From positions 24,738,001 to 24,802,000 of the forward strand of contig NC_087254.1 of the NCBI RefSeq assembly GCF_037042905.1: a DNA stretch of 64,000 nt. Direction: 5' to 3'. Position numbers and translations under genes: made by a program. This stretch comes from Lytechinus pictus. Lineage: Eukaryota. Of the stretch, positions 4,201 to 36,100 are shown piece after piece. The notes beneath the pieces were generated by a model. It did no database searches and was not told the origin of the DNA. It worked only from the letters and a program-made list of their open reading frames with translations. Numbering within the stretch: the first letter of the stretch is position 1; every line of letters begins with the position of its first letter.

Positions 4201-7200
4201 TCCCTAACGGTACAGTATATATTCCATTTATCAAATCATATGACACCCAAGTTGTTCATAATTGTCTGGGAATGATAACTGAAGTATTTTTCTTCATTAT
4301 GAGAGCAAAAGAAAAAGAAATAGTAAACATGAGAAATATACAATATAAACAGATTTATTAAATTTGGCTTCCCATAATTTTAGCACAGAGTAGACCGTAG
4401 TCTAAGTTAAACCTGACTTCAGAATACGGGCCATTGGTTGGAAGGCACTTCTGCACTTTGGGTTATAGGATAACTCCCCAGCCCAATGCAAACTCTCCCA
4501 GAAGGACACTTTGCTATACTATATACTAGGCTGATGACTATTGGGTCCCAAGTACAACTGTTTTCCTTGTTTTTACATATAATTATTTCTGCTTTCGTGA
4601 TATGAATTCTTCCAAACCACTACACCTGGATTTAGTGCGGCAAATATCAGTTGATGCCTTGTAGTTGTTTATAAACAGGGCCCTAAGTACAGAAAGAGAC
4701 TTGTCCCTGGGACCTCAAGTTATGCTGTATGCTTAAGGATTTACATAAAGGAATTATATTGTTTGTTGCTGTTGTTGTTTGTGGGTTTTTGTTTCTTTTT
4801 TTTTTGCTGCTTTTGTTGCAATAACTAAAGAACCGCTTTGATATTTAAAGTGCATAGAATCATTACATTTGAGGTTATCCTTTATAGTAGCATCAAAACA
4901 TTCTAATCGAACAAAGTATTCAAAGCTCAGGGGCTAGCCGCTAGCTAGAAACACCTATAGCTTGCTCCTCTATTTTGTTTTTTATCAGAATTTTCTGATG
5001 TCACTCATATTCTCAATTTTCTCTCGTTTCACCAGAGAGGAAAGTTCCGACCCAGATTGACTGAAATGGTCCAGACCAACAGCCCAGACCTTGTTGAGAA
5101 GTCTAGCCGACAAGCCTTCAAGAAGTTACCCAACGTGGGTGCTGCCATCAAAGAGTTGATTGTGCTAAAGGCAGTTGGTCCAGCAACAGCATCAGGTGGG
5201 TGTTTCATAAAGCTGTTTGTAAGTTAAAGTGATTGGTTAACTTTGGTTTGACTTTTAAAAAATCTGAGCTAGAAGGTCACACTTGTTACCTGTGTCTGTG
5301 ATATGTTACAAAAATGAAGTCCAGAAAAAATTGCGTTCGAAAATAATTATTTAGTGCTTCAAAAATTGAAATATAAAGTGACCGAAAACATCATCTTAAT
5401 TTCATCCCAAATGTGTACTATTTAGGCGTCTATAAGACGCCTATATATTTACAAAATCGGGGTTTGCCTTGTAGTTTTAGCTTTTCATTCTCAATAATGG
5501 TTGTTTTCAGGGTTTATTAGTTCTAATACATGCACTTGTACACATGTTTCATCTTGGTTTGAGAATTTTTTTAATCGGCTGCTCAGTAGTTAAACAATAC
5601 CTTTAAGAACGCCTGGTGATCCTTTCTTATGGCAAATGGTATATTCATTAGAGATGGTTTTGCGCGTAAGGATCACCAGTCGTTCTTAAAGTCACTCTTA
5701 ACTTACGAACAGCTTTATGAAACGGCCCCCAGGTATATCCCTAGTCCCCTGGATACTGTACGTTACAGTTCAAGGTAGAATCCTTGCTTGATGGGGGGTG
5801 GGTCTGCTCAAGGATCAGTGATGTTTGCACCTTTGCTCATCCTAACATCTCAAAATTAGTCCTTATAAGTAGTTTTATCAAAATCACGTTGCTGTTATTT
5901 TATTTTCAATGCTTTTATCTTCATTTTCAGTGTAGAGGGGTCACTATACAAACGGTATCAAATAATTGGATTTCCATGTTCAGGGTAGAAATGTTTGCCT
6001 GGTTGTGACGCCATTTAAAGTTTCAAAGCGTAGATCTTGTCATTTAGGTTGCATTTTAGATACATGAAGCATCAACCGGGGGTGTACTTGAGTCTATTGT
6101 ATTGCAGTTGATTTAAATGTTGAGCAATATTACTTATTCCTATCCAAATGATTTAGCTGCTATAACAATCATTAACTTATGGAATATTAATTCATTTCAA
6201 TTCTTTTCTTTTCTTTTTTTCTTGTCAGCCGTCTTAGCAGCAGGAGCCCCTGAACATGCCCCATTCATGGCAGATGAAAGTATGTTGCCTATTCCAGGCC
6301 TGTCCCCACTGGCTTACACTGAAGCTGCTTATAAAAGATATGCAGTAGAGGTTCAAGACTGTGTGAAGAGACTCAAAAAGGAAGGTAATGTACAATGGGA
6401 AGGAGATTGTGGAAAGAGAATGAATTTGAACAGTTAAAATCCCATGTGGATAGGGTGGATAGTTGACCAGTGGTATAAATGTTGCAGTGGGCTGAGATTT
6501 TAATAATGTGATGTTGTGTTCTGTAAAAAAAAAATTAAGTGGTTGAAGTGAGTGAGCTGAAAATTCGTATTTTTTTAATTGAATTTTTTGTCTCACCGGC
6601 ATAGCAGAGTGAGACTATAGGCGCCGCTTTTCCGACGGCGGCGTCAACACCAAATCTTAACCGAAGGTTAAGTTTTTGAAATGACAGCATAACTTAGAAA
6701 GTATATGGACCCAGTTCATGAAACTTGGCCATAAGATTAATCAAGTATTACTGAACATCCTGCCTGAGTTTCAGGTCACATGACCAAGGTCAAATGTAAT
6801 AGGGTCAATGAACTTTAATAGACCATGTTGGGGGAATCAACATCAAAATCTTAACCTAAGGCTAAGTTTTTGAAATGTCATCATAACTTAGAAAATATAT
6901 GGACCTAGTTCATGAAACTTGGACATAAGGTTAATCAAGTATTACTGAACATCCTGCTTGAGTTTCAGGTCACATGACCTGATGACCAAGGTCTAAGGTC
7001 ATTTAAGGTCAATGAACTTTGGCCATGTTGGGGGTATTTGTTGAATTACCATCATATCCCTGTAAGTGTTTTGGTCTAGTTCATAAAATGTGGAAATAAG
7101 AGTAACCAAGTATCATTTAACACCTTGTGCGAGTTTCAGGTCACATGACCAAGGTCAAAGGTCAATGGACTTTGGCCATATTGGGGGTATTTGTTGAATT

Positions 7201-15193: not shown

Positions 15194-18100
15194 ATGGCAC
15201 AGGAACATGAAGATAATGTAACCAGTCTTGAGAATGCCTCCTTTGCACGACTTGCAGCCGAAAAGGAGCAGGAATGGCGCCATCTTCAGGCCATGCATGC
15301 CCAAAGTCTTGAAGATTGTTTAAGAGAAAAGGACAAGACCTTGAAAGAGCACAAAGAGAAGTTTCAAATGCTCAAAGAAGATTTCAAATTCAATCTGAAA
15401 CTCCTTGCAGAGAGGGATCAGGAATTAGATCAGTAAGAACTTAAATATCTTTCTTTCTTTCTGTATGAAATTTTAAATCATAATCTCCATGTAATTTAAT
15501 TTATTTTTCTTTTTTCATATGCTACAGGGCATAATATTTGTGATATCGCATTGCAATAAACTAGGCAACATGTCTTTTATGGAGCAGATTTTTAAATGTG
15601 TCTAGACTCTGAACAAACATTAAAACGGTTTATAAGTTTGAGAAATGAAATCATGACTTGATGCTTTGACCTTTATGCATTGCCTAATTGCATTCCATTG
15701 TACTCAGTAGATGACTAAAACAAAAAGAAACATGTGCTTTGAATCCTGAGAAATATCAAACAGTGCTGTAGTTGATAAAGATGGTGCATTTGTAGCTTGA
15801 TGTTTCCAAATCCATTTTGTGTCAGATACCGGTGTTAATAGTATATTTTGGGAGAATGGGACTATTGGTAACTACTGGTAATATTTTTTTCTTTAACGTT
15901 TGTTGAAAAGTAAAAATCATTAGCATGGAAATTAATGGGTCAGCATTTGCTACAATCTATAGCCTCGAATCCTTCATTCTAAAGAGTAGCTAGAGATACA
16001 CATGACTTCAATCAGAACATATTCAGATTTAAGTTTATTTAGATTGCTGTGATACTAGCAATTGTTGTTTGATATGATCCTAATTTTGAAGGCTTGAAGT
16101 AATGCAAGAGCAGCTAAGAGCCAGGCTGCAATCCAGAGAGGCCGCAGTCAGTGAGTTGAAGATTCAAATCGATGAGCTAAAGACAAGAAGGAGTCAGGAC
16201 GAAAGGGCAATGGAGGATCTTCAAAGACACTATCAACAGAGGATTAGGGAAAAACAGGCTGAGGTGGAACAATACAAGATGTTAGTATCAAAGGGAAATA
16301 AACTCTTAATTCAATCTACAGTATTAAGTAAATGATGATTTTTCAATTACAGATATCTTGAAAATGTCTGCACATATTTTATTTTTTCTCTTCCACATAT
16401 TGAACAATATCAAGTTAAAACATGAATCAAAGTTTAGTATTTTCTAAAAGATCTATCAATGTCAGCCTATGCCTTTAATTGAATGCCTTCATGTTTCCAA
16501 ATGCAACCTACAACATGGAACAAGCTATCAAGTGATATGATGTTATTTATGCTCAGTTGTAAAGACGCTGAACTGCAGACAGAGCGGGATGAGGTGGAGG
16601 CACTGAGGCGTGATATGAAGCGGAGGATCAGTGAGGTCGAAGAAGAGCTTGATATTCAGCGCAGGGAGATGTCAGCTGGCTTTGATGATGCTTCCAGGAA
16701 GAGAGAGAAGGAATATCGGACCAAGATCGATGAGCTCAGCTCAACAGTGCTATCACATGAAATGAAGGTAAGAGGGTAATATTATCGCATGGCTGATGAA
16801 GGCTATCAAAGGTTAAGTCCACGTGAATAAGTTCATGTTAGCCTTTTGAAGGGAGGATGATCTTAATAGATGGTAAGGGTCACAATATCAAGGGTTTATG
16901 TTCCCAGGTCATATTCATGAAAATATTTCTTTCGTATTAATTATTATAACAGAAGAAACTTTCAAGGATCAATTTCAAACTTGAGGTATGCGTATGTGAG
17001 TGAGAATGATCTGATTACATTTTGGAGACAGAAGGTCAAAGGACAGAAAGGTCATTATTTCAAAATGTTATAATTTGAGTGCATAATACATTCATGATCA
17101 GGCAATGACAGTGGCAATAATGTTGACTGTGCAGTCAAGAATCAATCTATTTTGAAAATTGTAAAAGTTAGGTATGTAATACATGTGTATTCTCTGCCAA
17201 TCGCAAGGGCAAATAATTTTGAAAGGTGCTTTCAAGAATATATCTAGTTTTTCAGTTGCACAATGTTTTTTGTTTTGTCTTCAGGCCAAACTATTGAGCA
17301 AGGAATTGGAGCTGGTGAGAGGGGCGAGTCAACAGACCTCTACAGAACTCAAGAACAGTGATACCAAGATGGATGACCTGAAAAAGAAACTCAAACAGAC
17401 AGAATGGGAGCTGAGTGACCTCAGAGGTATCAAGGATGCGAGGTAAATTATTTTTTAAACAATTTTGAAGAGCATCAAAGTGTAGAGACATTTATTTATA
17501 AATTATGGCTTGCACCCAGTAATTTAGATTGCCTGTGCGGCCTGATAATCTTGGAACCTGTCATTCACTCCCTACCGAGCAGAGCCTCTACCATCAGGTC
17601 CTTTACAGCTCCACTTTAGAGTCACAAAGAAAATACATCGGCAACTCTGATTTTATTTGATACATAAGGAATGCATATAAAGTTTGATTGATTTGGGTTT
17701 TTTAATATGAAATAGAAATTGCAGCTGAATATGAAAGGACCGTATTAGAAGTAACTTTACTCTAAAATGGTTCCTACCAACTACCACCCAGTGGTTGTTT
17801 CATAAAGCTGTTTGTAAAGTTACACACAACTTTACGCAGGACTGGAACAGGATCTTAGGTGCTAAGTCAGCTACATGAGGATATATTGTGTGGCACAGAA
17901 AGGGTCACCAGTCGTGCCTAAATTCTTGCGTAATTTTACAAACAGCTTTATGAAACTGCCCCCAGGAATCATTCTTTAAATGTATCAAGCACTAAAAACA
18001 GGTATCAGAAGTAAATGTGGGGGATATGCCTTTGAATGACTAAAGAGTTGCAGTTTCATACAATGTGGTGTACACTATTCAAAAACTATTTATAATTGGT

Positions 18101-24100: not shown

Positions 24101-27100
24101 AACAATATCAGGTAGGTAGGCATTACCGTCTCTCCTGGTAGTTAGAAACTGAAAAACTTTGATAGTGGGATTGAAATTATGACTGTCTTAATTTTTCTGT
24201 TTTCATTTTCTACTTTTCTGCTCCTCTTCCCGATCAACAACTTTTTATTTTCTTTCTTCAATCTCTTCTTCTCACCCTTTTCTATGTTTCATTAGTTCTT
24301 GCCAAGAAAATAAATAGCTTAGAAAAGAATAGGTAATAATGGGTCAGGCAAAATGGGGACTCATATATTATTTGTTATGCTGAAGTAATTATGCTTCATT
24401 TTCACAGCCGAGAGAGAAACAGGCAGAGGTTGATCAGTTAAGGTATGAGCTATCCACCCAGGCCAGGCGCCATGCTGCCGAGTCTGCTTCCACTGCTCAG
24501 AGGATGAGTCAACTAGAACTAGAGTTACTAGAGGCTAGGAGAGAAGCAGATGAGTATTACAAGGGTACCTTACAGACCAACCTGGAAGCAACCACCCTTG
24601 GGCAACAGGTGAGGTTACTTTTAGTATGGTGTTGAAAACACAAAAAGCAATCATTTTTTCGGCAGCATGCGAGTTAGAGTGGATGTCCTAAAGTTTGGTG
24701 TTCAATGTTGATGTTGGTGTTAAGCATTAGTCACAACACCAAAACCAACATGAAAGCAACCACCCATGGGCAGTTTACATTAGGTTTTTTTTACTTCGGG
24801 TTACTTCAAATATGGTGTTTAAAACTAGTGTTGGTGCCTGATGGGTGTTTCATAAAATTGTTCATAAGTTAAGAGCAACTTTAAAAACGACTGATGAACC
24901 TTTCTTACGCGTTAGATAATCACCAATGAACATATAATGGTGAACATCATTTACCACAAGAAAAGATCACCAGTCGTTCTTAACCCTTTGCGTGCGGGCC
25001 CGCGAAACCGGATACCTCTCCCTGCGGCGGAGCTGTTTTTGTACATTGCTGGTATTTGGATCTGTGGCGGTCTTTTCCTAATCTATTGCTAAATGCACCA
25101 AACTGAAGTATTTTCAGGATTTTTAGTAAATGTAAAGATGAAAGATCAGACATTTTTCTTTCTAAAACTAAAGGTCTCGCTTCTCAAATCAACAGAATAG
25201 TTAAGAAATTTACGAGGAAAAAGTACTGTTATTTTGCCAAATCTTTGCTTTTTCCCAAGTCAATAGGCACTGTGTACAAAAATGCGTAAGGGCAATCAGC
25301 ACGCGCGGACAAGTCGGGTTCGATCGATACCGCTTTGTTGTCTGCTCTGGTGCTTTTTTTCATTGCCTATTGTCACCACTGAACTAGAAATATATAAAAA
25401 TGAAAGAGGAAAAAGTTCAAACTTAAAGCAAACAAAAGCAATCCATTCATCTAACAGAAATGATAATGATATTTGGTGTTTTTTAGATATATCTTTAAAA
25501 TTTTGAAAAACTAAGTGGTTTAGAAATGAATAAAATTTCAAAGTGAAACATTGTCAACTTACAAATTAGAGGAAACAGCGCCGGCATCCTACACAACAAG
25601 ACTAAAAACGAAAGCTAAAACAACTACATGTAGATCCAGTTATGAAAACTAAAAAAACTTGTTCCTCCTATTAAATCAGTAATCTGAGAATCTATTATGA
25701 TCATAAAAATTTCCCGCCGATTTTGTGATTATTTTGGTGGAAAACTGTTTATCATGTGTGATTGTTTGCACCATTGAGAATCTGCTCCGATCCTACATGC
25801 ATAGAGCCTGCATGCCACTGCACCCAGGCAGGAAGCCAGCTCGTTTGCAATGTATTTGGTTAGGAAAAAAATCACCCGCAGAACTTTCAAAAGTTTAGTT
25901 ATATCGATTAATTGTTGTCTCTGCTTCGTCATCTGTTTGGTTATTTGATGAAAATTCGTCACTTTTAAATGTATCAACTACATTTTGTTCAATATTCTAC
26001 AAATACGGGACAGATAGATGTGTCCCGGGAAGGGTTTGCCGGGACGCCGGGACAAAGGAGCAAAATACGGGACGATCCCGGGAAATACGGGACGTCTGGT
26101 CACCCTGGAAATATATGACAAGAGGTAGTGGTCTTTTTGTGCAATTTTTGACATGTGGAATATTTCATACTGACCAGGATATGCATATAACTGGTATGTG
26201 AAAATAAGCGAAATTTAGTGCCACAACTTTTTTAATGGAATTACCATTGCTATGCTTTTCTGATTTGTGCTCTAATTAGTAAACTTGTTAGAGTTGACTT
26301 GGTTTTGTTTATCCATCACCCATTCCTTTATGTAAAGGTGTATTGATGTATAAGCACATGTCGTGCAACATCCATGCTCTTCCAAATTAAATTTCATAAG
26401 AATTCAAATTCTATTGTGCCCATTTTTATATACACTGTACTTAGTAGATATTTCATGACTGAGCACACGAAGGTCCAACTTTGAAGGCTCATTAAAAGTA
26501 ACAACCTTCTTGTCCTCAAACTTCTATTCAATTTTTCACCCTGAATGTGTGATTGGACAGTATGAGAGAGAGGGAAGGGAATATTTACTCAAAATTTATA
26601 TAGAGAAAGTTGAAATGAGAAAGGCAAAATGGTAAAGAGAGAGAGGGGCATGAAAGTAGAAATGGAAGAAATAGAAGGGGATGGAGAAAAGGGAGGATAA
26701 GAGAGATTGACAGAAGAGGAAAATCAGAGAAAATGAGGTGAGATGAATAGTTGAATGAGAAGGGAGGTTTTAAAAAAAAAAGCTAGAGAAAAGGGACATG
26801 ATTTCTAATCGTTAAAAGAATTTTTTTTTATAATGCAACCAGCTAGTAGGCCTTTATTGTTCAGACAATTTGTAGGCCTATACTCAGAAAGCATATTTGT
26901 TGTGGGCCTTTCTTTGTCACAGTGTGCGCGTGAAAAAGGTCGAGTTTTTTATGATTTCATGTCTGTATGTTTACTCCCCTTTAATACAAAAATGTGACTA
27001 AATCAACATTTTCAGTTATGAAAGTATTCAATAACATATAGATCATGATGTAACAAAGCAAACTAAAACTTTAAACAGCACAAGGAAGTTTCTTTGCGTT

Positions 27101-30100
27101 CCTTTCTCCCATCTGCCTACACGCAGCATTTGTCGACCAGCCAGTATTGACCTAGCAAAATGGCGGCGCGGCTTTGTGTACGTTGGGAATAGGGACAAGT
27201 ATTCCACGTATTCTAGTTCAGTGATTGTCACGCTCCTCATGAATGGTCTCTTTACCCCCTTGTATACAGATCATTTGCAAAGTGTATAATTACGACGATA
27301 ATCCGTTTGGGGTGAAATCACAGCATACCAAATACCTTTATTTTCCAGAATGAATAAAAAAGGGTGAATGTTCCCTTGCAAGTACAATGATGATGCTGCG
27401 CAACGAAAGTCCGAAACTATTTTGTGATTTTTGGCTTCTGGGCTTTAAGACGGTGGCCTCAATGTTTCACTAAAAATCGCCTTTGGTTTCTCTTTTAATG
27501 AATTATAGTTTGTTAAAAAACGATTATCTTGTTCCTGAAGATTGCATACCAGTCTTCGATTTGTTTTCCTGTTGCAATTTCAAAGAGCGAAGGGGGTAAA
27601 TGTGACTCAAATAGTGGATCTGAAATCATACCTCCCAACGCTCTCCTCGTCTTGTTCTACGTTTCATTTTTCTATCTCCCTTTTCCCTCCAAAATAACCA
27701 TGCTACCGATTACTGTTCATCACAATGAGAGAAAGTAAATTATTTTTATCTATTGAAATTGTAGCATCTAAATTAAATATATTTATACATCTTTTTCAAA
27801 TATTTGGGTGTTGATTCTCACCAGGGTTAGCGCCCCCCCCCCCAAAAAAAAAGGTCAACCTGTCTTTTTTTTTTCTTTATATGGATCCTTTTCTGCTACG
27901 CTATTCGCCAGAAAAACAAAAGAAAAAAAAGGAGAAAGAAACTGGCGAAAAAAATTAATAACATTTTTAGGGGGAGGGTTAGGTGTAAGATTGAGAGGGG
28001 TTTGTCGGGACACGTCAAACAAACATGTTTTTTTTTTTTAGGTGGATGCCTCAACGTAAATTCTTATTCTATTTCCTCAATTTCCGGCGAGGAAACTTTT
28101 AGTTCATTGTTAGTTTTAGCGTTTGAACTGATTATGCTTTTTTCGAATTTTCAATGCAAAAAATTTCACCTGCTTGGGAGAGAAAGAGAGAATGAGATGA
28201 AAAGCTTCCAAACCTAACATGACAAATTCATTCTATAAAATGGCGTGAGTTACAAATTGAGGTGAGGGACTAGTATTCTATGATTCTTTATAAGTAAATA
28301 TTCATGCAATCGCAAAAGCGCACATTATGGTTTACATTATACCTTTTTGGTCCATTTCCTCTTTTTTCCCTTCCATCCTTTCTGTCGTTTTATCATTCTC
28401 CTATACATGAATCTCGATTTGCATTTTCTATTCTTTTTTTTAAATCTCACTTGCATCTTCTTCCATCCCTCTATGTATCATCACCCAGGGGAAATTGTAT
28501 TTTTTGTGAAGAAAGCACTGTCATGCTCAAGAAGAAAATGTTCTTGCCATGTATTAAGCGCCTGCCATGTTTTGTCAATAAATGAGTAAACATTTATTTT
28601 TTTGAATGTTACTGTCCTAATATGAAAAGCAGTAAGAGTTTTTTGTATTGCTAAATACGAGAAGCATTCAGTAGGTCATCCTGACGAAATATACTAATCT
28701 TCCTTTTATTCAGGGCGTTGGCTATTTGTCCCCTGCTCTTTTTATAAGGAATTTGTTTGAGCGTCCGCCATGACTTTCTTTTTGTTTGGGGAGTGCCGAG
28801 ACCAAGAACTGCATGGACGTTTTCATTTTCAAAAGAGCAGAGGATAAACGGTGTTCTAAATTCCTTTATTTTCTGTTTGTTTCCTTTGAAATAGAAGACA
28901 AAAATAAGAGCAATATCGGATGAGAGAACGAGAGAAAGCGGAGGGGGGGGTTCAAAAATTAACCAGGGGCCCGTTTTATATAAAATTTGTTTACAAATTT
29001 TCAATAACACTTGAAAGCTACTGAAATCCTTCTATTTGACTGGCGGATGGTAAATTTGTTTAAATTATTGCGCATTTGTCAATATAAAATGTACATGTAT
29101 AATGTATTTATAAAACGGTGCCAATTAGGGATTTCCTCGTTTTCCCTTTCTCTGGTTTCTAACCTGTAACCGAATGTATTATCTACAGCTTTCATTCCCT
29201 TATATCTATCGTCTTTCTATATCCCCTCCCTTCTACACCTTTCTTTCTCTGAGTTCTTCTCATTTAAATTATATCTGTATCGTCTTCCTTCTTCCCGATT
29301 TGGATTACGAGGTATATACCCGCCCCCATCCCCCTCAATCCTTTCTGATTTTTTCTTCTCAGTTCCTGTCATTTTACATTACATCTAACGTCTCCCCGCT
29401 CTCTTTCTCTCTTCATCGGAAACGGTTCCGAGAGAATGCCTCCTTTTTGCCAACTTGTATCGGAGATGGTTGGAATTGTGGGCCTCTTGTTCTATTGCAT
29501 CGTAGTCATCATGTCGAAAATTTTGGGGGGTTTTCCCCCACTTTCTCAAATAATGTCTCGAAAAACCTTTTAAAATTACTATTGTAACTGTCATTTCACA
29601 ATGAATTCTATATCATCTTCCATTTTCTATATTGATAACATGGGTAGATATCTTTCGCAAAAGACAATATGATGATGATCATCATCATCATCGTATAAAA
29701 ATGCACAACTTAACTATTTGTGAACTTGGGGCTTAGGGTTATGGCAAGACAGGCCTCAATCTTTCACTAAAAGTAATTTTCTTTTTTAGATTTTTTCATA
29801 AATTATATGTCTCATTTAATTTGATTTTCCATGCAGCTACTAGTATTATAATGATAAAATAATTTTGTTCCTGAAGTTTGCGCACCGGTATTCGATTTGT
29901 AATATCCTGAAATTATTTCTAAGTGTTAAACGAATGAAAGTGACTAAAATTGTAAGTCTGAAATCATACCTCCCAACTCTCTTCTTGTCACTTTCTACGT
30001 TTCTTTCTTTATCTTACTATTCCCTCAAAAAGAGCCATGATAGCAATTAATGAAAGTAAGAGAAAGTAATTTTTCTTGAATAAATTATAGCATCCGTAAT

Positions 30101-33100
30101 CATGTTCTTTCGTTTTGTTCTATTATCTCCTTCGTTTTGTTATATTGTCTCCTTGATTTCACAGCCGAAAACAAAGTAATAAATAAATCATTAAAAAACA
30201 TTCACAACAGTTAGAATTCATTTTTGTCTCTATCGTTTTAATCGTTCAATCTCATAGTACAGAGGCAGCGCAGTTGGTAGGAAGTTTCCGTCCTCACCCC
30301 TTTCAGCAAACATGTACAAAAAAATCTGAAGTCTATATAAATTTATGATTTTTTTGGGCCGGTCCACTCCCTCCCACATTCAGCTCAACCCCTCCATTAT
30401 CAAAAACGCTCAGTGGCCCCTGTTTTTTATTTTAAAAAATCAGATATTTTGGTTTTGATGCTAGCCAGGGTAAGCGCCCTAAATGTTTGTTTGCAGTAAC
30501 GGAAACAATTTGTTTTCCTCTATGAATCTTTTCTACCACGCTATTTGCCGGTTTAAAAAAAGAAGAAAGAAATTGGCGAAAAAGTAGGAAAATCAATAAA
30601 ATTTGGGTCGGTATCAAAATTTTTTTTGGGGGGGTGTAGGTCACACATGAATAAAAGTTTGTAGGATTGAGAGGGTTCTATCGGATGACAAACCAGACAA
30701 ACAAATTATCATCCTGTATCATTTTATTTCCTCCATTTCGCGCGAGGAAACTTTTAGTTCATTATTGGTTTTATAATTTGAAGTGATTATGTTTCCGGCA
30801 ACTTTTCAATGCAAAAGTTTTCATCTGGGAGAGAAAAGGAAATAAGATGAAGAGCTTCTTAAACCTAACCTATTATAAATTCATTCTGTAAAATGACATA
30901 AATTAACAAATTGTGATTTTTTTTTTTGCCACTTCACCCCCGTCCCACAGCTCAACCCCTGCACCATAAAAAACATTGCTGTCCCTGTATAACATCTTTT
31001 TCCACATATTTTGGTTTAGATGCTAACCATGGTAAGCGCCCCAAATGCAATTTTTTTTTGGGGTCGTAACGGGGAAAAAAAGTGGCCAGGACGGTCTTTA
31101 TTCTTATCTTTTCTACCGCGTTACTCGCAATTAAAAACAGAAAATCGGAGAGAGGAGACAAACAAGCAATTTTAGAGTGTAGGTCAGAACATTTCCATCT
31201 GGGGAGGGGGCAAGGTCAAACAAGAATAATGATAAAAAGTCATCAGTATGGCAAGGGTCTGGGGACCGAGTTGCGACAAACAAACGTTGTGGGATTTTTT
31301 AAAAGTAATCTAACCAAAAAATAAAGTCATGTTGTTATTCGTTTAAGTAGATATTCATGGAATTTTAGCAAAAGCACACTTGTCTAATCCCCTTTTATCT
31401 CTGTCTCTCATTCTCTCTCGTTCTCTGTGACATCTGAACATATTTTTTCTATAATTTCCCTAAATGATTCTTCGTTCATCCTTATATGCATCATCACCCA
31501 GGGGTAGCGCTTTTATGCAATATGAATCACTGACGGATGTCATAAGCACCTGCGTTGTCGGTAAATGAGACAATTTTTGTCTCACCTGCATAGCAGAGTG
31601 AGACTATAGGCGCCGCTTTTCCGACGGCGACGGCGGCGGCGGCGTCAACACCAAATCTTAACCTGAGGTTAAGTTTTTGAAATGACAGCATAACTTAGAA
31701 AGTATATGGACCTAGTTCATGAAACTTGGCCATAAGGTTAATCAAGTATTACTGAACATCCTGCCTGAGTTTCATGTCACATGACCAAGGTCAAAGGTCA
31801 TTTAGGGTCAATGAACTTAGACCATGTTGGGGGAATCAACATCAAAATCTTAACCTAAGGTTAAGTTTTTGAAATGTCATCATAACTTAGAAAATATATG
31901 GACCTAGTTCATGAAACTTATACATAAGGTTAATCAAGTATCACTGAACATCCTGCATGAGTTTCACGTCACATGACCAAGGTCAAAGGTCATTTAGGGT
32001 CAATGAACTTTGGCCGAATTGGGGGTATCTGTTGAATTACCATCATAACTTTGAAAGTTTATGGATCTGATTCATGAAACTTGGACATAATAGTAATCAA
32101 GTATTACTGAACATCCTGTGCAAGTTTCAGGTCACATGATCAAGGTCAAAGGTCATTTAGGGTCAATGAACTTTGGCCAAATTGGGGTATTTGTTGAATT
32201 ACAGCCATAAATTTGAACGTGTGTTGGTCTAGTTCATAAAACTTGGACATAATAGTAATCAAGTATCACTGAACATCCTGTGCGAGTTTCAGGTCACATG
32301 ATCAAGGTCAAAGGTCATGTAAGGTCAAAGAACTTTGGCCACGTTGGGGGTATTTGTTGAATTGCCATCATATCTCTATAAGTGTATTGGTCTAGTTCAT
32401 AAAACGTGGAAATAAGAGTAACCAAGTATCACTGAACATCTTGTGCGAGTTATAGTAGTTTTCAAAATCAGCACTGCTGCTATATTGAATCGCGTGATGC
32501 AGGTGAGACGGCCAGAGGCATTCCACTTGTTTCTTTTTAGATACGGTTTGTTGGTCGAAAAAAAAGTATTCATAAAAGCTTTTTGTATTGCTAAGTACGA
32601 AAAGCATTCAATGGGTCATCCTGCCGATAAACACTAATCTTCCTTTTGTTCGGGGCGTTGACCATCTGTATCCTGCTCTTTTCGGAAGGAATTTATTTGA
32701 GTGGCCGCCCAGACATTCTTTTGTTCGGATAGTGCCAATATCATGAACTACATGGACGTTTCCCTTTTGAAAAGAGCAGAAGATGAATGGTGTGCTTAAC
32801 TGCTTTCTTTTCTCTTTTTTTCAGAATAGTAGACAAAAATAATAAGAAGGAGGATAATGGGGAGGGAAAAAGTTCAAAAGTGCACCAAGATCAGCTCAAA
32901 GTACTAAGACATAACAAGCTTTTTGTTTTTCTGAAAATACAATCGATCAATGAAACCAAGGAGATATCATTCTATCTAAAGTGATATCTCCTTGATGAAA
33001 CAAATAAGACGAAAATGGTGAATAAACGCGTAGCTTATTACGTGACGATCTTGCAGAAAAGATAGCGTATATCTATCAGAACAACGATATGGATCAAATC

Positions 33101-36100
33101 ACGTGATCAGAACAAATCACGTGATCAGGCCTTGTGCGCGCATACGTGCTCGTCACAAAATTTATTCTCCCCGTCAGACTCCAACGAGAAAATCGGATAA
33201 AGTTGAAATGATTTCCTAATTTCGGGATTTTTCCCCACGTAGCTGTATATTTTTTTCAATCTGTTATCGAAATAGGTTTATAAAGGAAATAGTGGCAGAG
33301 GTTTAAGTACATAAAAATTACGAAAGAGCTGAAAAACTTCATTGAATTAAACCAAACATATCTCGGCTTCTGTAGAAGCCCGTCGTAGCTAAGTGAACGA
33401 CTCGCTGGGCTTCTGTGGAAGCCCGTCGCACGCAAAGGGTTAAAGTCGCTCTTAACTTACGAACAGCCCCCAGGACACCTGCCAAAATACCCAAACCAAA
33501 TTGGAAGTAACCTTTAATAGGACAGCAGGTGGGTGTTTCATAAAGCTGTTCGTAAGTTAAGAACGACTGGTGATCCTTTCTTGTGGTACATGGTAGATTC
33601 ATTGGCGATGGTTTAGAGCGTAAAAAGGATCACCAGTCGTACTTAAAGTCGCTCTTAACTTACGAACAGCTTTATGAAACGGACCCCAGGTGGGTGTTTC
33701 ATAAAGCTGTTCGTAAGTTAAGAGCGACTTTAAGAACGACTGGTGATCCTTTCTTATTGCGAATGGTATATTCATTAGCGATGGTTTTGCGCGTAAGAAA
33801 CGATCACCAGTCGTACTTAAAGTCGCTCTTAACTTACAAACAGCTTTATGAAACGGACCCCAGGTAAGTTAACATGGGATGATTTCAAGTATAGTATTAA
33901 ACATTAGTGTTTCACACGAGTGTTGGTGTAGAAGCAAGACTCCTGTTCAAAGACACTGAAGCTTTTATAGAATGGTATTAGACTTTATTTTCTGCCCCCT
34001 AAATCCACATACTGTATATTTTTACACTGAAAGTAGATTATGAGTTATAAAATCATGGTCATGAGAAAAAGAATGATAGTGATTATCCAAATTACTATTA
34101 CTGGAAATGCTTGATATTTCATATCACTTTCTGTTATACATGCCTTCAAGAAGCTCCAAACAAGTTGACTGTTAATTTTTTTTCAAGCTACCTTGCTTTT
34201 AGTGCAATGTGTTTACTATTATTATTTTTTTTTGCTTCCCAGGTCTCTGCTCTGACTATGGATCTTGCTGGTCGAGGTTCAACTAACAGGCATGGGATCC
34301 AGGTTAGTTATATTTACTTCACAACAAGATTTTGTTTGAATTTGTTACCAGTTCATTGTTTTATAAAATGAAAATGAAAATATATTGCATAGCTTGTACT
34401 GGTCAGAAAACAATACTCAAAAGATATCTGTAGCATAATCTTGAAGAAAAATGATTATTAATTGACAAATACTTGCAGAAAAAAAGAAAAAATCATATTG
34501 TTCAATAATTAGAAATATATCACTTGTTTCTTAATAACTAGGCCTGAATGACACAAAAAAATTATATATTTAATCACCCCCATCCTTTGATTACCTGAAG
34601 CAAACCTGTTACCAATCATTTAATTCTATGTTCTGTTGCAATCATTTTTATCAGAGTCCATTGGTAACCCAGCTTCAGAGAGAAGTTCATAATCTTAGGT
34701 CTCAGCTGGCTAGGGTCAGAACTCATCCGGGAGATGATCAAAATGCAGACCGTGATGGCGTAAGTATATTTAGTTGGCTAACCATTTCCATCATGATTGG
34801 TAAATTTATGGGCCCCTTTATGTCATGGCCGATGGAGATAACCTGGAGCATGGTACAAGAATATGGTGAAACCTTTCTTGACAGGATGTCAGTGTTCATG
34901 TTCAGAGGATGGAGATTTTTCTCTGTAAAAGACTACCAGACTGGATACAGGAGGGGGGGGGGGTCTGTACATACACGGTACACATAAAGCTCAATTAATG
35001 TGTGTGGGGGGTATGATGAACAGGGGTAAATCGAATGTTCGGTTTTTTTTACCAATGTCATTTTCTACAGCTAACTAAGAATTTACTAGACTTTTTAAAA
35101 TCAAATTTGCTTATTTGACCATATTTAATCCCAAGCCATGTTTGATTATTTCTTGTAAAAGTTTCAACAACAACAGGCCATTATTCATCATTTCACAGAT
35201 AATCTATCAAAATTATGGGGTATTTTCATAATCAAAAGTATGTAGCTATATGTACCGACTGGGGTCTTTTGTTTTGCCACCAGTTGCAAGCTAAACTCAA
35301 GACAGCAGCACGTCATATTAGTCAACTAGCCAAGGAAAAACAGAAACTTATTGAGATGGGTAATCGATTACGATCAGAGCTGGCCCTCTACAGACCTTCA
35401 CCTCCTCCCCAACTGTCAAAGGGTCAGAGGTCAGCTGCAGGAGAGAGGAGTGTGACAGCAGGGAAGCTGGCAGAGCAGGTCTCTTTTAAGCTTCAAAACT
35501 TGGAGAAACTGCAGTATGCTCTCACCAAGCAGGTAAAGTCATGGCCAAATTTTCTGATAATGATAACAATATCATATATTACAGATAAGTTTAATTCCAC
35601 ATTGTTAGCTAAATGATAAATTGACATAACATTGATAAAAAAGATATTTGTTGCCATCTTTATTGGCTTTTAGACAATACAATTTAATTAATGTAATTGC
35701 CCTGTTGATCTGAACTACATGTATTTGGTTAAATCTAGATGGATTTAGATTATGAATCTCTTTAAACAAGAAAATGAGACAAATATTGGTTATCCTATCT
35801 CATAGGATGCCGTAGCTATGGGCATTTTAGGGATCAGACTGAAACAAAGGAACAAGGGCAAGTTTTTCTGTTTGGACACTGGACATCTTGTTAATGACAA
35901 TGAAACACTTGCACCACTTCTGTTACGCTCCCGAGTTCTTGCATGGTCATTGACCAACAGTGAATTTTGTTCCAGGGTGAACTCAGGATGAACCATAATT
36001 CCAGTTCTGTACTTGTCTTACTCATTAAGGTGTCAGCATAAGTAACTGCTTTCAAATCAGGCAAGCTCTTTTTGAGGCAGGTGTAACAATTGGACAAATA

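What the first reader, a model, noticed from the sequence alone, without database searches (positions are those of the whole stretch)
33526..33869. Same MITE inserted twice in tandem at another CAG|GTAAGT donor
Seen: CAG|MITE|CAG|MITE|CAG|GTAAGT, in the same orientation as at 5196. The target is a perfect donor consensus within a decayed copy of the CCDC57 exon 13 end. Three of about five family copies in the window therefore sit at CAG|GT, and all five point the same way as host transcription. Inference: preference for, or selective tolerance at, donor sites. Each insertion regenerates the target, building a chain of potential recursive splice sites in a 9.6-kb intron.
Basis: partly seen in the sequence, partly recalled or inferred. 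Interest (0 to 1): 0.7.

Follow-up and report, generated by a model that had tools for sequence, protein, structure and literature searches.

The report
Two small transposons inserted in tandem
Two different copies of a small non-coding sea urchin transposon landed one after the other on the same three-base target inside a long intron; the family does this hundreds of times genome-wide because each insertion recreates its preferred landing sequence, and it does not seek out splice sites.

Summary
Window 33526-33869 reads CAG | 158-bp MITE | CAG | 171-bp MITE | CAG | GTAAGT, inside the 9.6-kb intron 24609-34242 of a coiled-coil gene expressed from the + strand.

The two copies are only 86% alike. 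Each is closer to dispersed copies (93-97%), and most of their differences are subfamily polymorphisms. They are therefore two independent insertions, not a local duplication.

Genome-wide the family has at least 6000 ends. Its 3-bp duplication is CWG, with CAG and CTG equally common. The GT after the left CAG belongs to the element. The target is the palindrome G-A-C-CWG-G-T-C, as in NuwaI/Harbinger-type transposons.

Each insertion leaves two good targets at its own borders. About 385 abutting pairs share one CWG, in all orientations (221 head-to-tail, 93 head-to-head, 71 tail-to-tail). This is the known double-insertion route to transposon dimers.

Donor targeting is not supported. Of 606 right ends followed by CAGGT, only 3 continue as GTRAGT, including this one, which is about chance. 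The donor look here is inherited, because the target is a decayed copy of the exon-13 end.

I could not test recursive splicing, because the unique intron sequence had no read depth. The acceptor-like side is weak and lies in a very stable hairpin. The finding is ordinary and of low interest.

The parts
33526..33528 (+). Left copy of the 3-bp target duplication (CAG)
   Evidence: Read directly. Genome-wide, the 3 bases before the constant GTGGGTG are CAG or CTG.
33529..33686 (+). MITE copy 1, 158 bp, of the short subfamily that carries a 12-bp deletion in the left arm
   Evidence: It is 93-94% identical to dispersed 158-161-bp copies that share the deletion, and 86% identical to its neighbour.
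33687..33689 (+). The single CAG shared by the two copies (the regenerated target that was used again)
   Evidence: The same architecture occurs at 221 head-to-tail sites genome-wide.
33690..33860 (+). MITE copy 2, 171 bp, of the full-length subfamily
   Evidence: It is 96-97% identical to many dispersed 171-bp copies.
33861..33863 (+). Right copy of the target duplication (CAG)
33864..33960 (+). Right flank. It starts with GTAAGT and is the 3' part of a decayed copy of the 'exon-13 end plus intron start' unit.
33474..33525 (+). Left flank, the 5' part of the same decayed unit (homologous to the last ~40 nt of exon 13)
24504..24608 (+). 3' part of the real upstream exon (open frame ending ...LGQQ), followed by the true donor CAG|GTGAGG at 24609
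24720..24840 (+). Second, better preserved copy of the exon-end unit inside the intron
   Evidence: z 12.2 against the exon end.
24841..24983 (+). Left part of an older MITE copy. Its left flank is CTG. It is interrupted at its own TTAA.
24984..33439 (.). About 8.5-kb insertion with CCC...GGG ends and TTAA on both sides (piggyBac-like). It splits the older MITE.
   Evidence: I read the ends. The element as a whole is another finding's subject (s1-311776).
33444..33470 (+). Right remainder of the older MITE copy, followed by CAG|GACACC
5196..5729 (+). Copy of the family with about 370 bp of foreign internal sequence. It sits exactly on a real exon-intron boundary (CAG..CAG|GTATAT).
   Evidence: The exon continues at about 6210, so the intron existed before the insertion.
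17792..17962 (+). Diverged copy flanked by CAG..CAG|GAATCA (no GT)
34243..34302 (+). Next expressed exon of the host gene (60 nt), behind a strong pyrimidine tract
   Evidence: A joint at 34299/34302 to 34652/34655, GT..AG, is seen in 14 raw RNA reads and in two runs' contigs.
34655..34758 (+). Following exon
35283..35533 (+). Following exon
   Evidence: with the open frame.

Best explanation
The feature is a dimer made by two separate cut-and-paste insertions of a non-autonomous transposon (MITE). The family is of the PIF/Harbinger-related NuwaI type and duplicates a CWG target.

The transposase, supplied in trans and not identified here, prefers the palindrome G-A-C-CWG-G-T-C and duplicates the central CWG. 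The element's own ends supply the preferred neighbours: the left end begins GT, and the right end finishes CCC. Every resident copy is therefore flanked by two fresh, good targets.

The older, short-subfamily copy most likely inserted first into ...CAG|GTAAGT. The younger full-length copy then inserted into the regenerated right-hand CCC-CAG-GT site. This order is inferred from subfamily divergence only.

The target looked like a splice donor for two reasons. It descends from a local duplicate of the exon-13 3' end, and CAG|GT is half of the transposase's preferred site.

Nothing shows that the dimer does anything for the host gene. It is most likely spliced out as part of the 9.6-kb intron.
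For: Shown:
- The TSD is CWG, and GT is part of the element.
- The target logo from 58 fetched copies is palindromic.
- The two copies are 86% alike, while each is 93-97% like unlinked copies. 20 of the 24 differing alignment columns, including the 12-bp deletion shared by 11 dispersed copies, are polymorphisms present in other copies.
- Abutting pairs with exactly one CWG between them number 221 head-to-tail, 93 head-to-head and 71 tail-to-tail. About 5 of 88 unique listed right flanks run straight into another copy.
- The flanks on either side of the dimer are collinear with one local repeat unit, so both belong to the same locus.

Literature:
- NuwaI elements have CWG duplications, 12-61 bp inverted repeats that usually start GGG, and a two-ORF Harbinger-like partner (PMC4482050).
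- PIF/Harbinger elements have an extended target preference (PMC2836001).
- Transposon dimers with a target duplication in the junction arise by double insertion driven by site preference (PMC5932611).
Against: - No autonomous partner with these inverted repeats was found. The genome has 144 DDE_Tnp_4 matches, but the 30 best, each with 1.5-kb flanks, lack the repeat.
- The left end starts GT-GGG rather than GGG.
- No read or contig uniquely spans the dimer. A haplotype-merging assembly error, with one copy per haplotype at the same site, is therefore not formally excluded.
- My rough position-weight estimate (inference) predicts only about 60 abutting pairs, against about 385 seen. Site preference alone may not be the whole story. 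Local re-insertion, transposase tethering to resident ends, or mobilisation of dimers as units may contribute.
- Head-to-tail pairs are somewhat over-represented (221 against 164 inverted). Part of this may be undercounting of the more variable right end.
Confidence: 0.8

Rival explanations
1. Donor-site targeting or selective retention. The family prefers, or is preferentially tolerated at, CAG|GT splice donors in the sense orientation.
For: - Two of the four target sites in the window are a real donor (5193) or a donor-derived site (33861).
- All five copies are in sense orientation.
- Logically (inference), a copy landing exactly on a real donor is tolerable only in the sense orientation. 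Only the left end restores a GT next to the exon.
Against: - Genome-wide, the flank is CAG or CTG equally often.
- Only about 30% of right flanks continue with GT. None of the 12 non-dimer CAGGT flanks listed continues as GTRAGT.
- Only 3 of 606 CAGGT-flanked right ends continue as GTRAGT, which is chance level.
- Of the 5 reverse-oriented left ends followed by CAGGTRAGT, 4 are simply head-to-head dimers.
- Stranded RNA over the element core is about 58% antisense.
- None of 58 fetched copies has coding-looking flanks.
Confidence: 0.07
2. The tandem is a local duplication, an unequal-crossover product, or an assembly artefact of a single insertion.
For: - Tandem repeats are error-prone in assemblies of highly heterozygous genomes.
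- No unique spanning read was available.
- The surrounding intron has itself undergone local duplications.
Against: - The copies differ at 14% of positions. Most differences are subfamily-diagnostic, including a 12-bp indel shared with 11 unlinked copies. Each copy has closer relatives elsewhere.
- Exactly one TSD-length CAG lies in the junction.
- The same architecture recurs at hundreds of loci and in inverted orientations, which duplication cannot produce.
- The flanks are collinear with one repeat unit.
Confidence: 0.05
3. The dimer is functional in splicing. CCCCAG|GTGGGT and CCCCAG|GTAAGT would act as zero-length-exon recursive splice sites, or each element plus one CAG would behave as a self-contained intron (introner-like).
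For: - Each unit runs GT...AG by sequence, and removing one unit would restore CAG|GT exactly.
- A branch-point-like CTTAAC lies about 35 nt upstream of each AG (read).
- Introners have been reported in the purple sea urchin, family not stated in the held text (PMC12130899).
Against: - The tract before each AG is only about half pyrimidine, with a GAAACGGA block. The real acceptor at 34242 is almost pure pyrimidine.
- The 344 nt fold into a structure of -187.5 kcal/mol (z -19), which buries most of both units. The middle junction sits in the 15-nt loop of a 57-bp stem.
- No listed joint or right-anchored loose end lies at 33690 or 33864. The loose ends at the element borders have about 0.4 agreement, so they are the flanks of other copies. 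Only the best-supported rows of those tables were shown.
- The 5196 copy sits in a pre-existing intron.
- None of 58 copies is flanked by coding-looking sequence.
Confidence: 0.05

Closest known systems
NuwaI group of the PHIS (PIF/Harbinger-ISL2EU-Spy) superfamily and its MITEs (Han et al. 2015, PMC4482050)
   Same: - 3-bp CWG target duplication.
- Long terminal inverted repeats (57-61 nt here, 12-61 nt in the paper).
- The right end starts GGG directly after the duplication.
- Animal host.
- Extended palindromic target preference, as reported for PIF/Harbinger elements (PMC2836001).
   Different: - The left end carries two extra bases (GT) before GGG.
- No autonomous two-ORF partner was linked to it here.
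- Echinoderms were not among the 16 host genomes listed in that paper.
Transposon tandem dimers formed by double insertion at a regenerated target (McGurk and Barbash 2018, PMC5932611)
   Same: - The junction contains exactly one target-duplication-length sequence that matches the family's target motif.
- The two members are demonstrably independent copies.
- Dimers are frequent in a family with strong site preference.
- Inverted dimers with a palindromic junction also occur.
   Different: - The element is a 160-170-bp MITE in a sea urchin, not P-element, hobo or jockey in Drosophila.
- The data are fixed copies in one assembly, not population data.
- No expansion beyond two copies is seen at this locus.
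Introners (intron-generating transposons; Gozashti et al. 2025, PMC12130899, which reports them in Strongylocentrotus purpuratus)
   Same: One element plus one CAG reads GT...AG, and its removal would restore the target exactly. This is the architecture introners use.
   Different: - Here the copies lie inside, or at the start of, pre-existing introns.
- I found no copy that constitutes a whole intron between coding flanks.
- The published sea urchin family could not be compared, because no supplement was held.
Recursive (zero-length-exon) splice sites of long introns in Drosophila and vertebrates
   Same: An AG is juxtaposed to GTAAGT deep inside a long intron.
   Different: - The pyrimidine tract is weak.
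- The sites are embedded in a very stable hairpin.
- There is no RNA evidence.
- The family shows no conservation of or enrichment for GTRAGT.

Membership tests
MITE (non-autonomous class 2 element) | Short, non-coding, with terminal inverted repeats, a target duplication and high copy number | tested here: met
   The copies are 158-171 bp with 57-61-nt arms. The flanks are CWG. At least 6028 left ends match within 2 mismatches. No open frame lies in the element (reading).
NuwaI / PIF-Harbinger-related (PHIS) transposons | 3-bp target duplication with consensus CWG | tested here: met
   200 listed flanks and 58 fetched copies were examined. 54 of 58 left flanks and 52 of 58 right flanks are C-N-G with W in the middle. 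Rare non-CWG flanks are duplicated on both sides: CAA/CAA, CGG/CGG, CCG/CCG.
NuwaI / PIF-Harbinger-related (PHIS) transposons | Inverted repeats of 12-61 bp that usually start with GGG | tested here: met
   The reverse complement of the right end starts GGGNCC directly after CWG. The left end reads GT-GGGTG, so GGG is offset by 2 bases.
NuwaI / PIF-Harbinger-related (PHIS) transposons | Extended, palindromic target preference around the duplication | tested here: met
   The logo is G(45%) A(52%) C(64%) CWG G(67%) T(47%) C(34%). PMC2836001 states the superfamily property.
NuwaI / PIF-Harbinger-related (PHIS) transposons | An autonomous partner with the same ends, encoding a DDE transposase plus a Myb/SANT protein | tested here: inconclusive
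   The genome holds 144 DDE_Tnp_4 (PF13359) matches. The 30 best loci, with 1.5 kb on each side, hold no match to the repeat. Wider flanks could not be fetched.
Double-insertion transposon dimer | The junction holds one target-duplication-length sequence that fits the target motif | tested here: met
   CAG lies at 33687-33689. 221 head-to-tail junctions with CWG exist genome-wide.
Double-insertion transposon dimer | The two members are independent copies, not duplicates of each other | tested here: met
   The copies are 86% alike, against 93-97% to unlinked copies. 20 of 24 differing columns are shared polymorphisms.
Double-insertion transposon dimer | Inverted as well as direct dimers occur, as expected for a palindromic target | tested here: met
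   There are 93 head-to-head and 71 tail-to-tail sites, against 221 head-to-tail.
Introner | Copies make up whole spliced introns between coding flanks that are absent from orthologues | tested here: inconclusive
   This is not the case at this locus or at 5196, where the introns pre-exist. None of 58 fetched copies has coding-looking flanks. The sample is small, and no annotation or orthologues were available.
Recursive splice site | A strong pyrimidine tract plus AG directly followed by a consensus donor | tested here: not met
   AG|GTAAGT is present. The 20 nt before the AG are only about 50% pyrimidine, while the real acceptor at 34242 is almost pure pyrimidine.
Recursive splice site | Junction reads from the upstream exon to the site, and sawtooth intron coverage | tested here: inconclusive
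   The unique intron sequence 33970-34183 has depth 0 in about 6% of a 21-Gb ribo-depleted run. No joints are listed at 33690 or 33864.

The most novel reading that the evidence does not exclude
The family may be splice-competent. One element plus one CAG would form a complete GT...AG unit that the sea urchin spliceosome can remove. Copies in the sense orientation would then be near-neutral even in exons or on donors, so the family would be an introner source. Dimers like this one would be removed stepwise through zero-length-exon (recursive) sites. My data do not exclude this, because there was no intron read depth and no annotation-wide test. The sequence features argue against it.
Probability: 0.06. 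Interest if true: 0.6.

Novelty: new member of a known kind. Interest (0 to 1): 0.22.

Why it matters
It matters little for splicing biology. The donor-like appearance is a by-product of a transposase target (CCWGG, often followed by T) that overlaps half of the CAG|GT donor motif. At this site it also reflects a duplicated exon end.

The finding is useful as a documented case. In a sea urchin, a CWG-targeting Harbinger-related MITE family regenerates its own target and forms hundreds of abutting pairs. Such pairs are the raw material from which transposon-derived satellites and long hairpins can grow.

It is also a caution for annotators. Copies of this family begin with GT after CAG and end with CAG, so they will often mimic splice junctions.

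Tried and rejected
- **5-bp CAGGT duplication.** I first suspected this. I rejected it because the flank varies between CAG and CTG while GT stays constant, and the right flank after CWG is variable.
- **Introner creating the intron at 5196.** I rejected this because the exon continues only at about 6210.
- **Read check of the assembly and of recursive splicing.** The runs hold the exons and the repeat, but no unique intron sequence. No piece spans the dimer uniquely.
- **Autonomous partner.** The transposase loci lacked the repeat within 1.5 kb. For the same reason I could not inspect the two other CAG|GTRAGT sites (C1:28235767, C16:19072098).
- **Host gene identity (CCDC57).** This is not verified. 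An Atlas look-up of one exon gave nothing. I ran no further search on a peripheral point, and I searched no spliced model.
- **Rfam.** The inter-element hairpin gave only sub-threshold generic miRNA-precursor matches.
- **Supplement of the sea urchin introner paper.** It was not held.
- **Empty-site sequence.** I built the pre-insertion site (flanks joined without the elements) only inside a script for alignment. It was not sent to any search.
Full report
**What is there**

Window 33526-33869 reads CAG, a 158-bp element, CAG, a 171-bp element, CAG, then GTAAGT. Both elements have the same polarity. The left end is GTGGGTGTTTCAT and the right end is ATGAAACGGACCC. In the second copy the inverted arms are 61 nt long and 95% complementary. 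The 28-nt arm core occurs seven times in the window and never in 100 shuffles.

A BLAST of both copies against the window and direct reading give five copies at four sites, all left-to-right on the + strand:

| Copy | Flanks | Note |
|---|---|---|
| 5196-5729 | CAG..CAG\|GTATAT | on a real exon-intron boundary |
| 17792-17962 | CAG..CAG\|GAATCA | diverged copy |
| 24841-24983 + 33444-33470 | CTG..CAG\|GACACC | split by a TTAA-flanked ~8.5-kb insertion |
| 33529-33860 (the dimer) | CAG..CAG\|GTAAGT | this finding |

The genome is a sea urchin assembly of 812 Mb.

**Host gene**

- Stranded raw RNA reads and contigs from two organism labels cover exons 34243-34302, 34655-34758 and 35283-35533.
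- A GT..AG joint at 34299/34302 to 34652/34655 is supported by 14 reads. Read polarity shows a + strand transcript.
- The upstream exon ends at 24608 before GTGAGG.
- I did not verify that the gene is CCDC57.

**The target site**

I removed the two elements inside a script only. The flanks then align collinearly over about 95 nt with a repeat unit at 24720-24846 (z 10.8, 0 of 1000 shuffles). That unit is a clear copy of the exon-13 end plus intron start (z 12.2). The direct match of the site to the exon end is weak (z 3.5), but it places CAG|GT on the true donor. The donor-like target is therefore inherited from a duplicated exon end. The collinearity also shows that both flanks belong to one locus.

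**What the family does genome-wide**

- Copy number: the left end occurs at least 6028 times within two mismatches.
- Left flank: in 100 listed left flanks, the five bases before GGGTG are CAG-GT or CTG-GT. GT is therefore part of the element and the variable CWG is the duplication.
- Right flank: in 100 listed right flanks (88 unique by my hand count), CWG follows the element and the sequence then varies. G at +1 occurs in about two thirds, and GT in 25 of 84.
- Orientation: pooled hand counts give CAG 80 and CTG 75, so the element has no orientation preference relative to the target.
- Logo: 58 fetched copies give the palindrome G-A-C-CWG-G-T-C.

This matches the NuwaI group of the PIF/Harbinger-related PHIS superfamily. 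That group has CWG duplications, 12-61 bp repeats that usually start GGG, and animal hosts (PMC4482050). It also matches the extended target preference known for the superfamily (PMC2836001).

I could not link an autonomous partner. The genome has 144 DDE_Tnp_4 matches, but none of the 30 best loci carries the repeat within 1.5 kb.

**Donor preference**

Right ends followed by CAGGT number 606. Only 3 of them, including this window's, continue as GTRAGT. That is 0.5%, against about 0.9% expected from base composition. In the window itself, 2 of 98 CAGGT sites continue that way.

In the opposite orientation there are 5 such sites, and 4 of those are head-to-head dimers whose partner has a mutated end.

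Stranded total-RNA reads over the non-palindromic core of the element are about 58% antisense. Sense orientation is therefore not a family rule, although this measure is weighted by expression.

The family does not target donors. CAG|GT is simply half of CCWGGT.

**Why a tandem**

The two copies are 86% identical. Copy 2 is 96-97% identical to many unlinked 171-bp copies. Copy 1 is 93-94% identical to unlinked 158-161-bp copies.

Of the 24 alignment columns where they differ, 20 are polymorphisms present in other copies. These include a 12-bp deletion shared by 11 dispersed copies. The copies are therefore two independent insertions from different subfamilies. They are not a duplication, an unequal crossover or a repeat-collapse artefact.

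Abutting pairs that share exactly one CWG, counted within 2 mismatches:

| Orientation | Sites |
|---|---|
| head-to-tail | 221 |
| head-to-head | 93 |
| tail-to-tail | 71 (about 12 belong to one segmental repeat on C17) |

Pairs in all orientations are what re-insertion into a palindromic target predicts. Slippage or duplication cannot produce the inverted ones.

The element's ends supply the preferred neighbours: CWG-GT on the left and CC-CWG on the right. Each copy is therefore flanked by two good targets. This is the double-insertion mechanism described for Drosophila transposon dimers (PMC5932611).

My rough position-weight estimate gives about 60 expected pairs, against about 385 observed. 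This is an inference, not a computation on the whole genome. Some extra attraction to resident copies, or movement of dimers as units, may also contribute.

**Splicing**

Each unit reads GT...AG, and the junctions read AG|GT. Several features argue against use as splice sites:

- The 20 nt before each AG are only about half pyrimidine. The real acceptor at 34242 is nearly pure pyrimidine.
- The 344 nt fold at -187.5 kcal/mol (z -19). Copy 1's right arm pairs with copy 2's left arm in a 57-bp stem.
- No listed joint or right-anchored loose end lies at 33690 or 33864. The loose ends at the element borders have about 0.4 agreement, so they are the flanks of other copies. Only the best-supported rows of those tables were shown.

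The unique intron sequence had zero depth, so recursive splicing is untested rather than refuted.

Introners are reported in the purple sea urchin (PMC12130899). The family is not named in the held text and the supplement was unavailable. None of my 58 copies has coding-looking flanks.

**Earlier notes from this scan**

An earlier follow-up on the copy at 5193-5738 (s1-311593) reached the same reading: a Harbinger-type MITE on a donor because of its landing sequence. I tested the target preference independently here and agree.

**Verdict**

- Target regeneration and double insertion are supported, and they are a known phenomenon.
- Donor preference is not supported.
- Recursive splicing is unsupported.

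Noticed in passing
L002-L059 (fetched copies); window 24838-24840 versus 33471-33473: The two flanking trinucleotides are often discordant. Of 38 copies with CWG on both sides, 11 have CAG on one side and CTG on the other. Rare non-CWG flanks can still be duplicated exactly (CAA/CAA, CGG/CGG). This is too frequent for point mutation. One possible cause is that the excised element carries donor-TSD 5' overhangs. This follows from the staggered-TSD-cleavage model of PMC4561436 and would leave a mismatched middle base at the new site. A second possible cause is hairpin-templated correction.
   Followed up: partly
window 24980-33443: An insertion of about 8.5 kb with CCC...GGG ends and TTAA on both sides sits in the TTAA of an older MITE copy. 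It accounts for most of the 9.6-kb intron. It is already noted by the scan as s1-311776.
   Followed up: partly
window 24560-24700, 24720-24846, 33474-33528 plus 33864-33960: The last ~40 nt of the exon plus ~90 nt of intron start are present three times in the intron: the real copy and two decayed ones. MITE copies sit at or next to two of them.
   Followed up: partly
G000 C1/C2, e.g. C1:7616769-7616956, 7623951-7624138, 7631087-7631274: One MITE copy with identical flanks recurs many times, partly at about 7-kb spacing. The flanks are ...TTGATCAGGC on the left and CTGGGCTTGGAAATG on the right. The MITE is therefore embedded in a larger repeated or tandemly duplicated unit.
   Followed up: no
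G000 C17:11790275-12836585: The same tail-to-tail junction, with the same mismatch, recurs 12 times at roughly 80-170-kb spacing. This points to a large segmental tandem repeat on that chromosome.
   Followed up: no
window 33622-33753: The junction of the two copies forms a 57-bp, 98% complementary hairpin with a 15-nt loop. It gives sub-threshold matches to several miRNA-precursor models (best 58 bits against a cut-off of 100). Dimers of this family are ready-made long hairpins in pre-mRNA.
   Followed up: partly
window 34652-35533 in runs X15 versus X3/X24: Two organism labels hold the exons and the MITE words. Contigs of organism A differ from the window by about 3-9% in these exons (8 of 251 and 10 of 107 letters). 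Organism B differs by 0.4-5% (1 of 250 and 5 of 108). The family is therefore shared by at least two related sea urchins.
   Followed up: no
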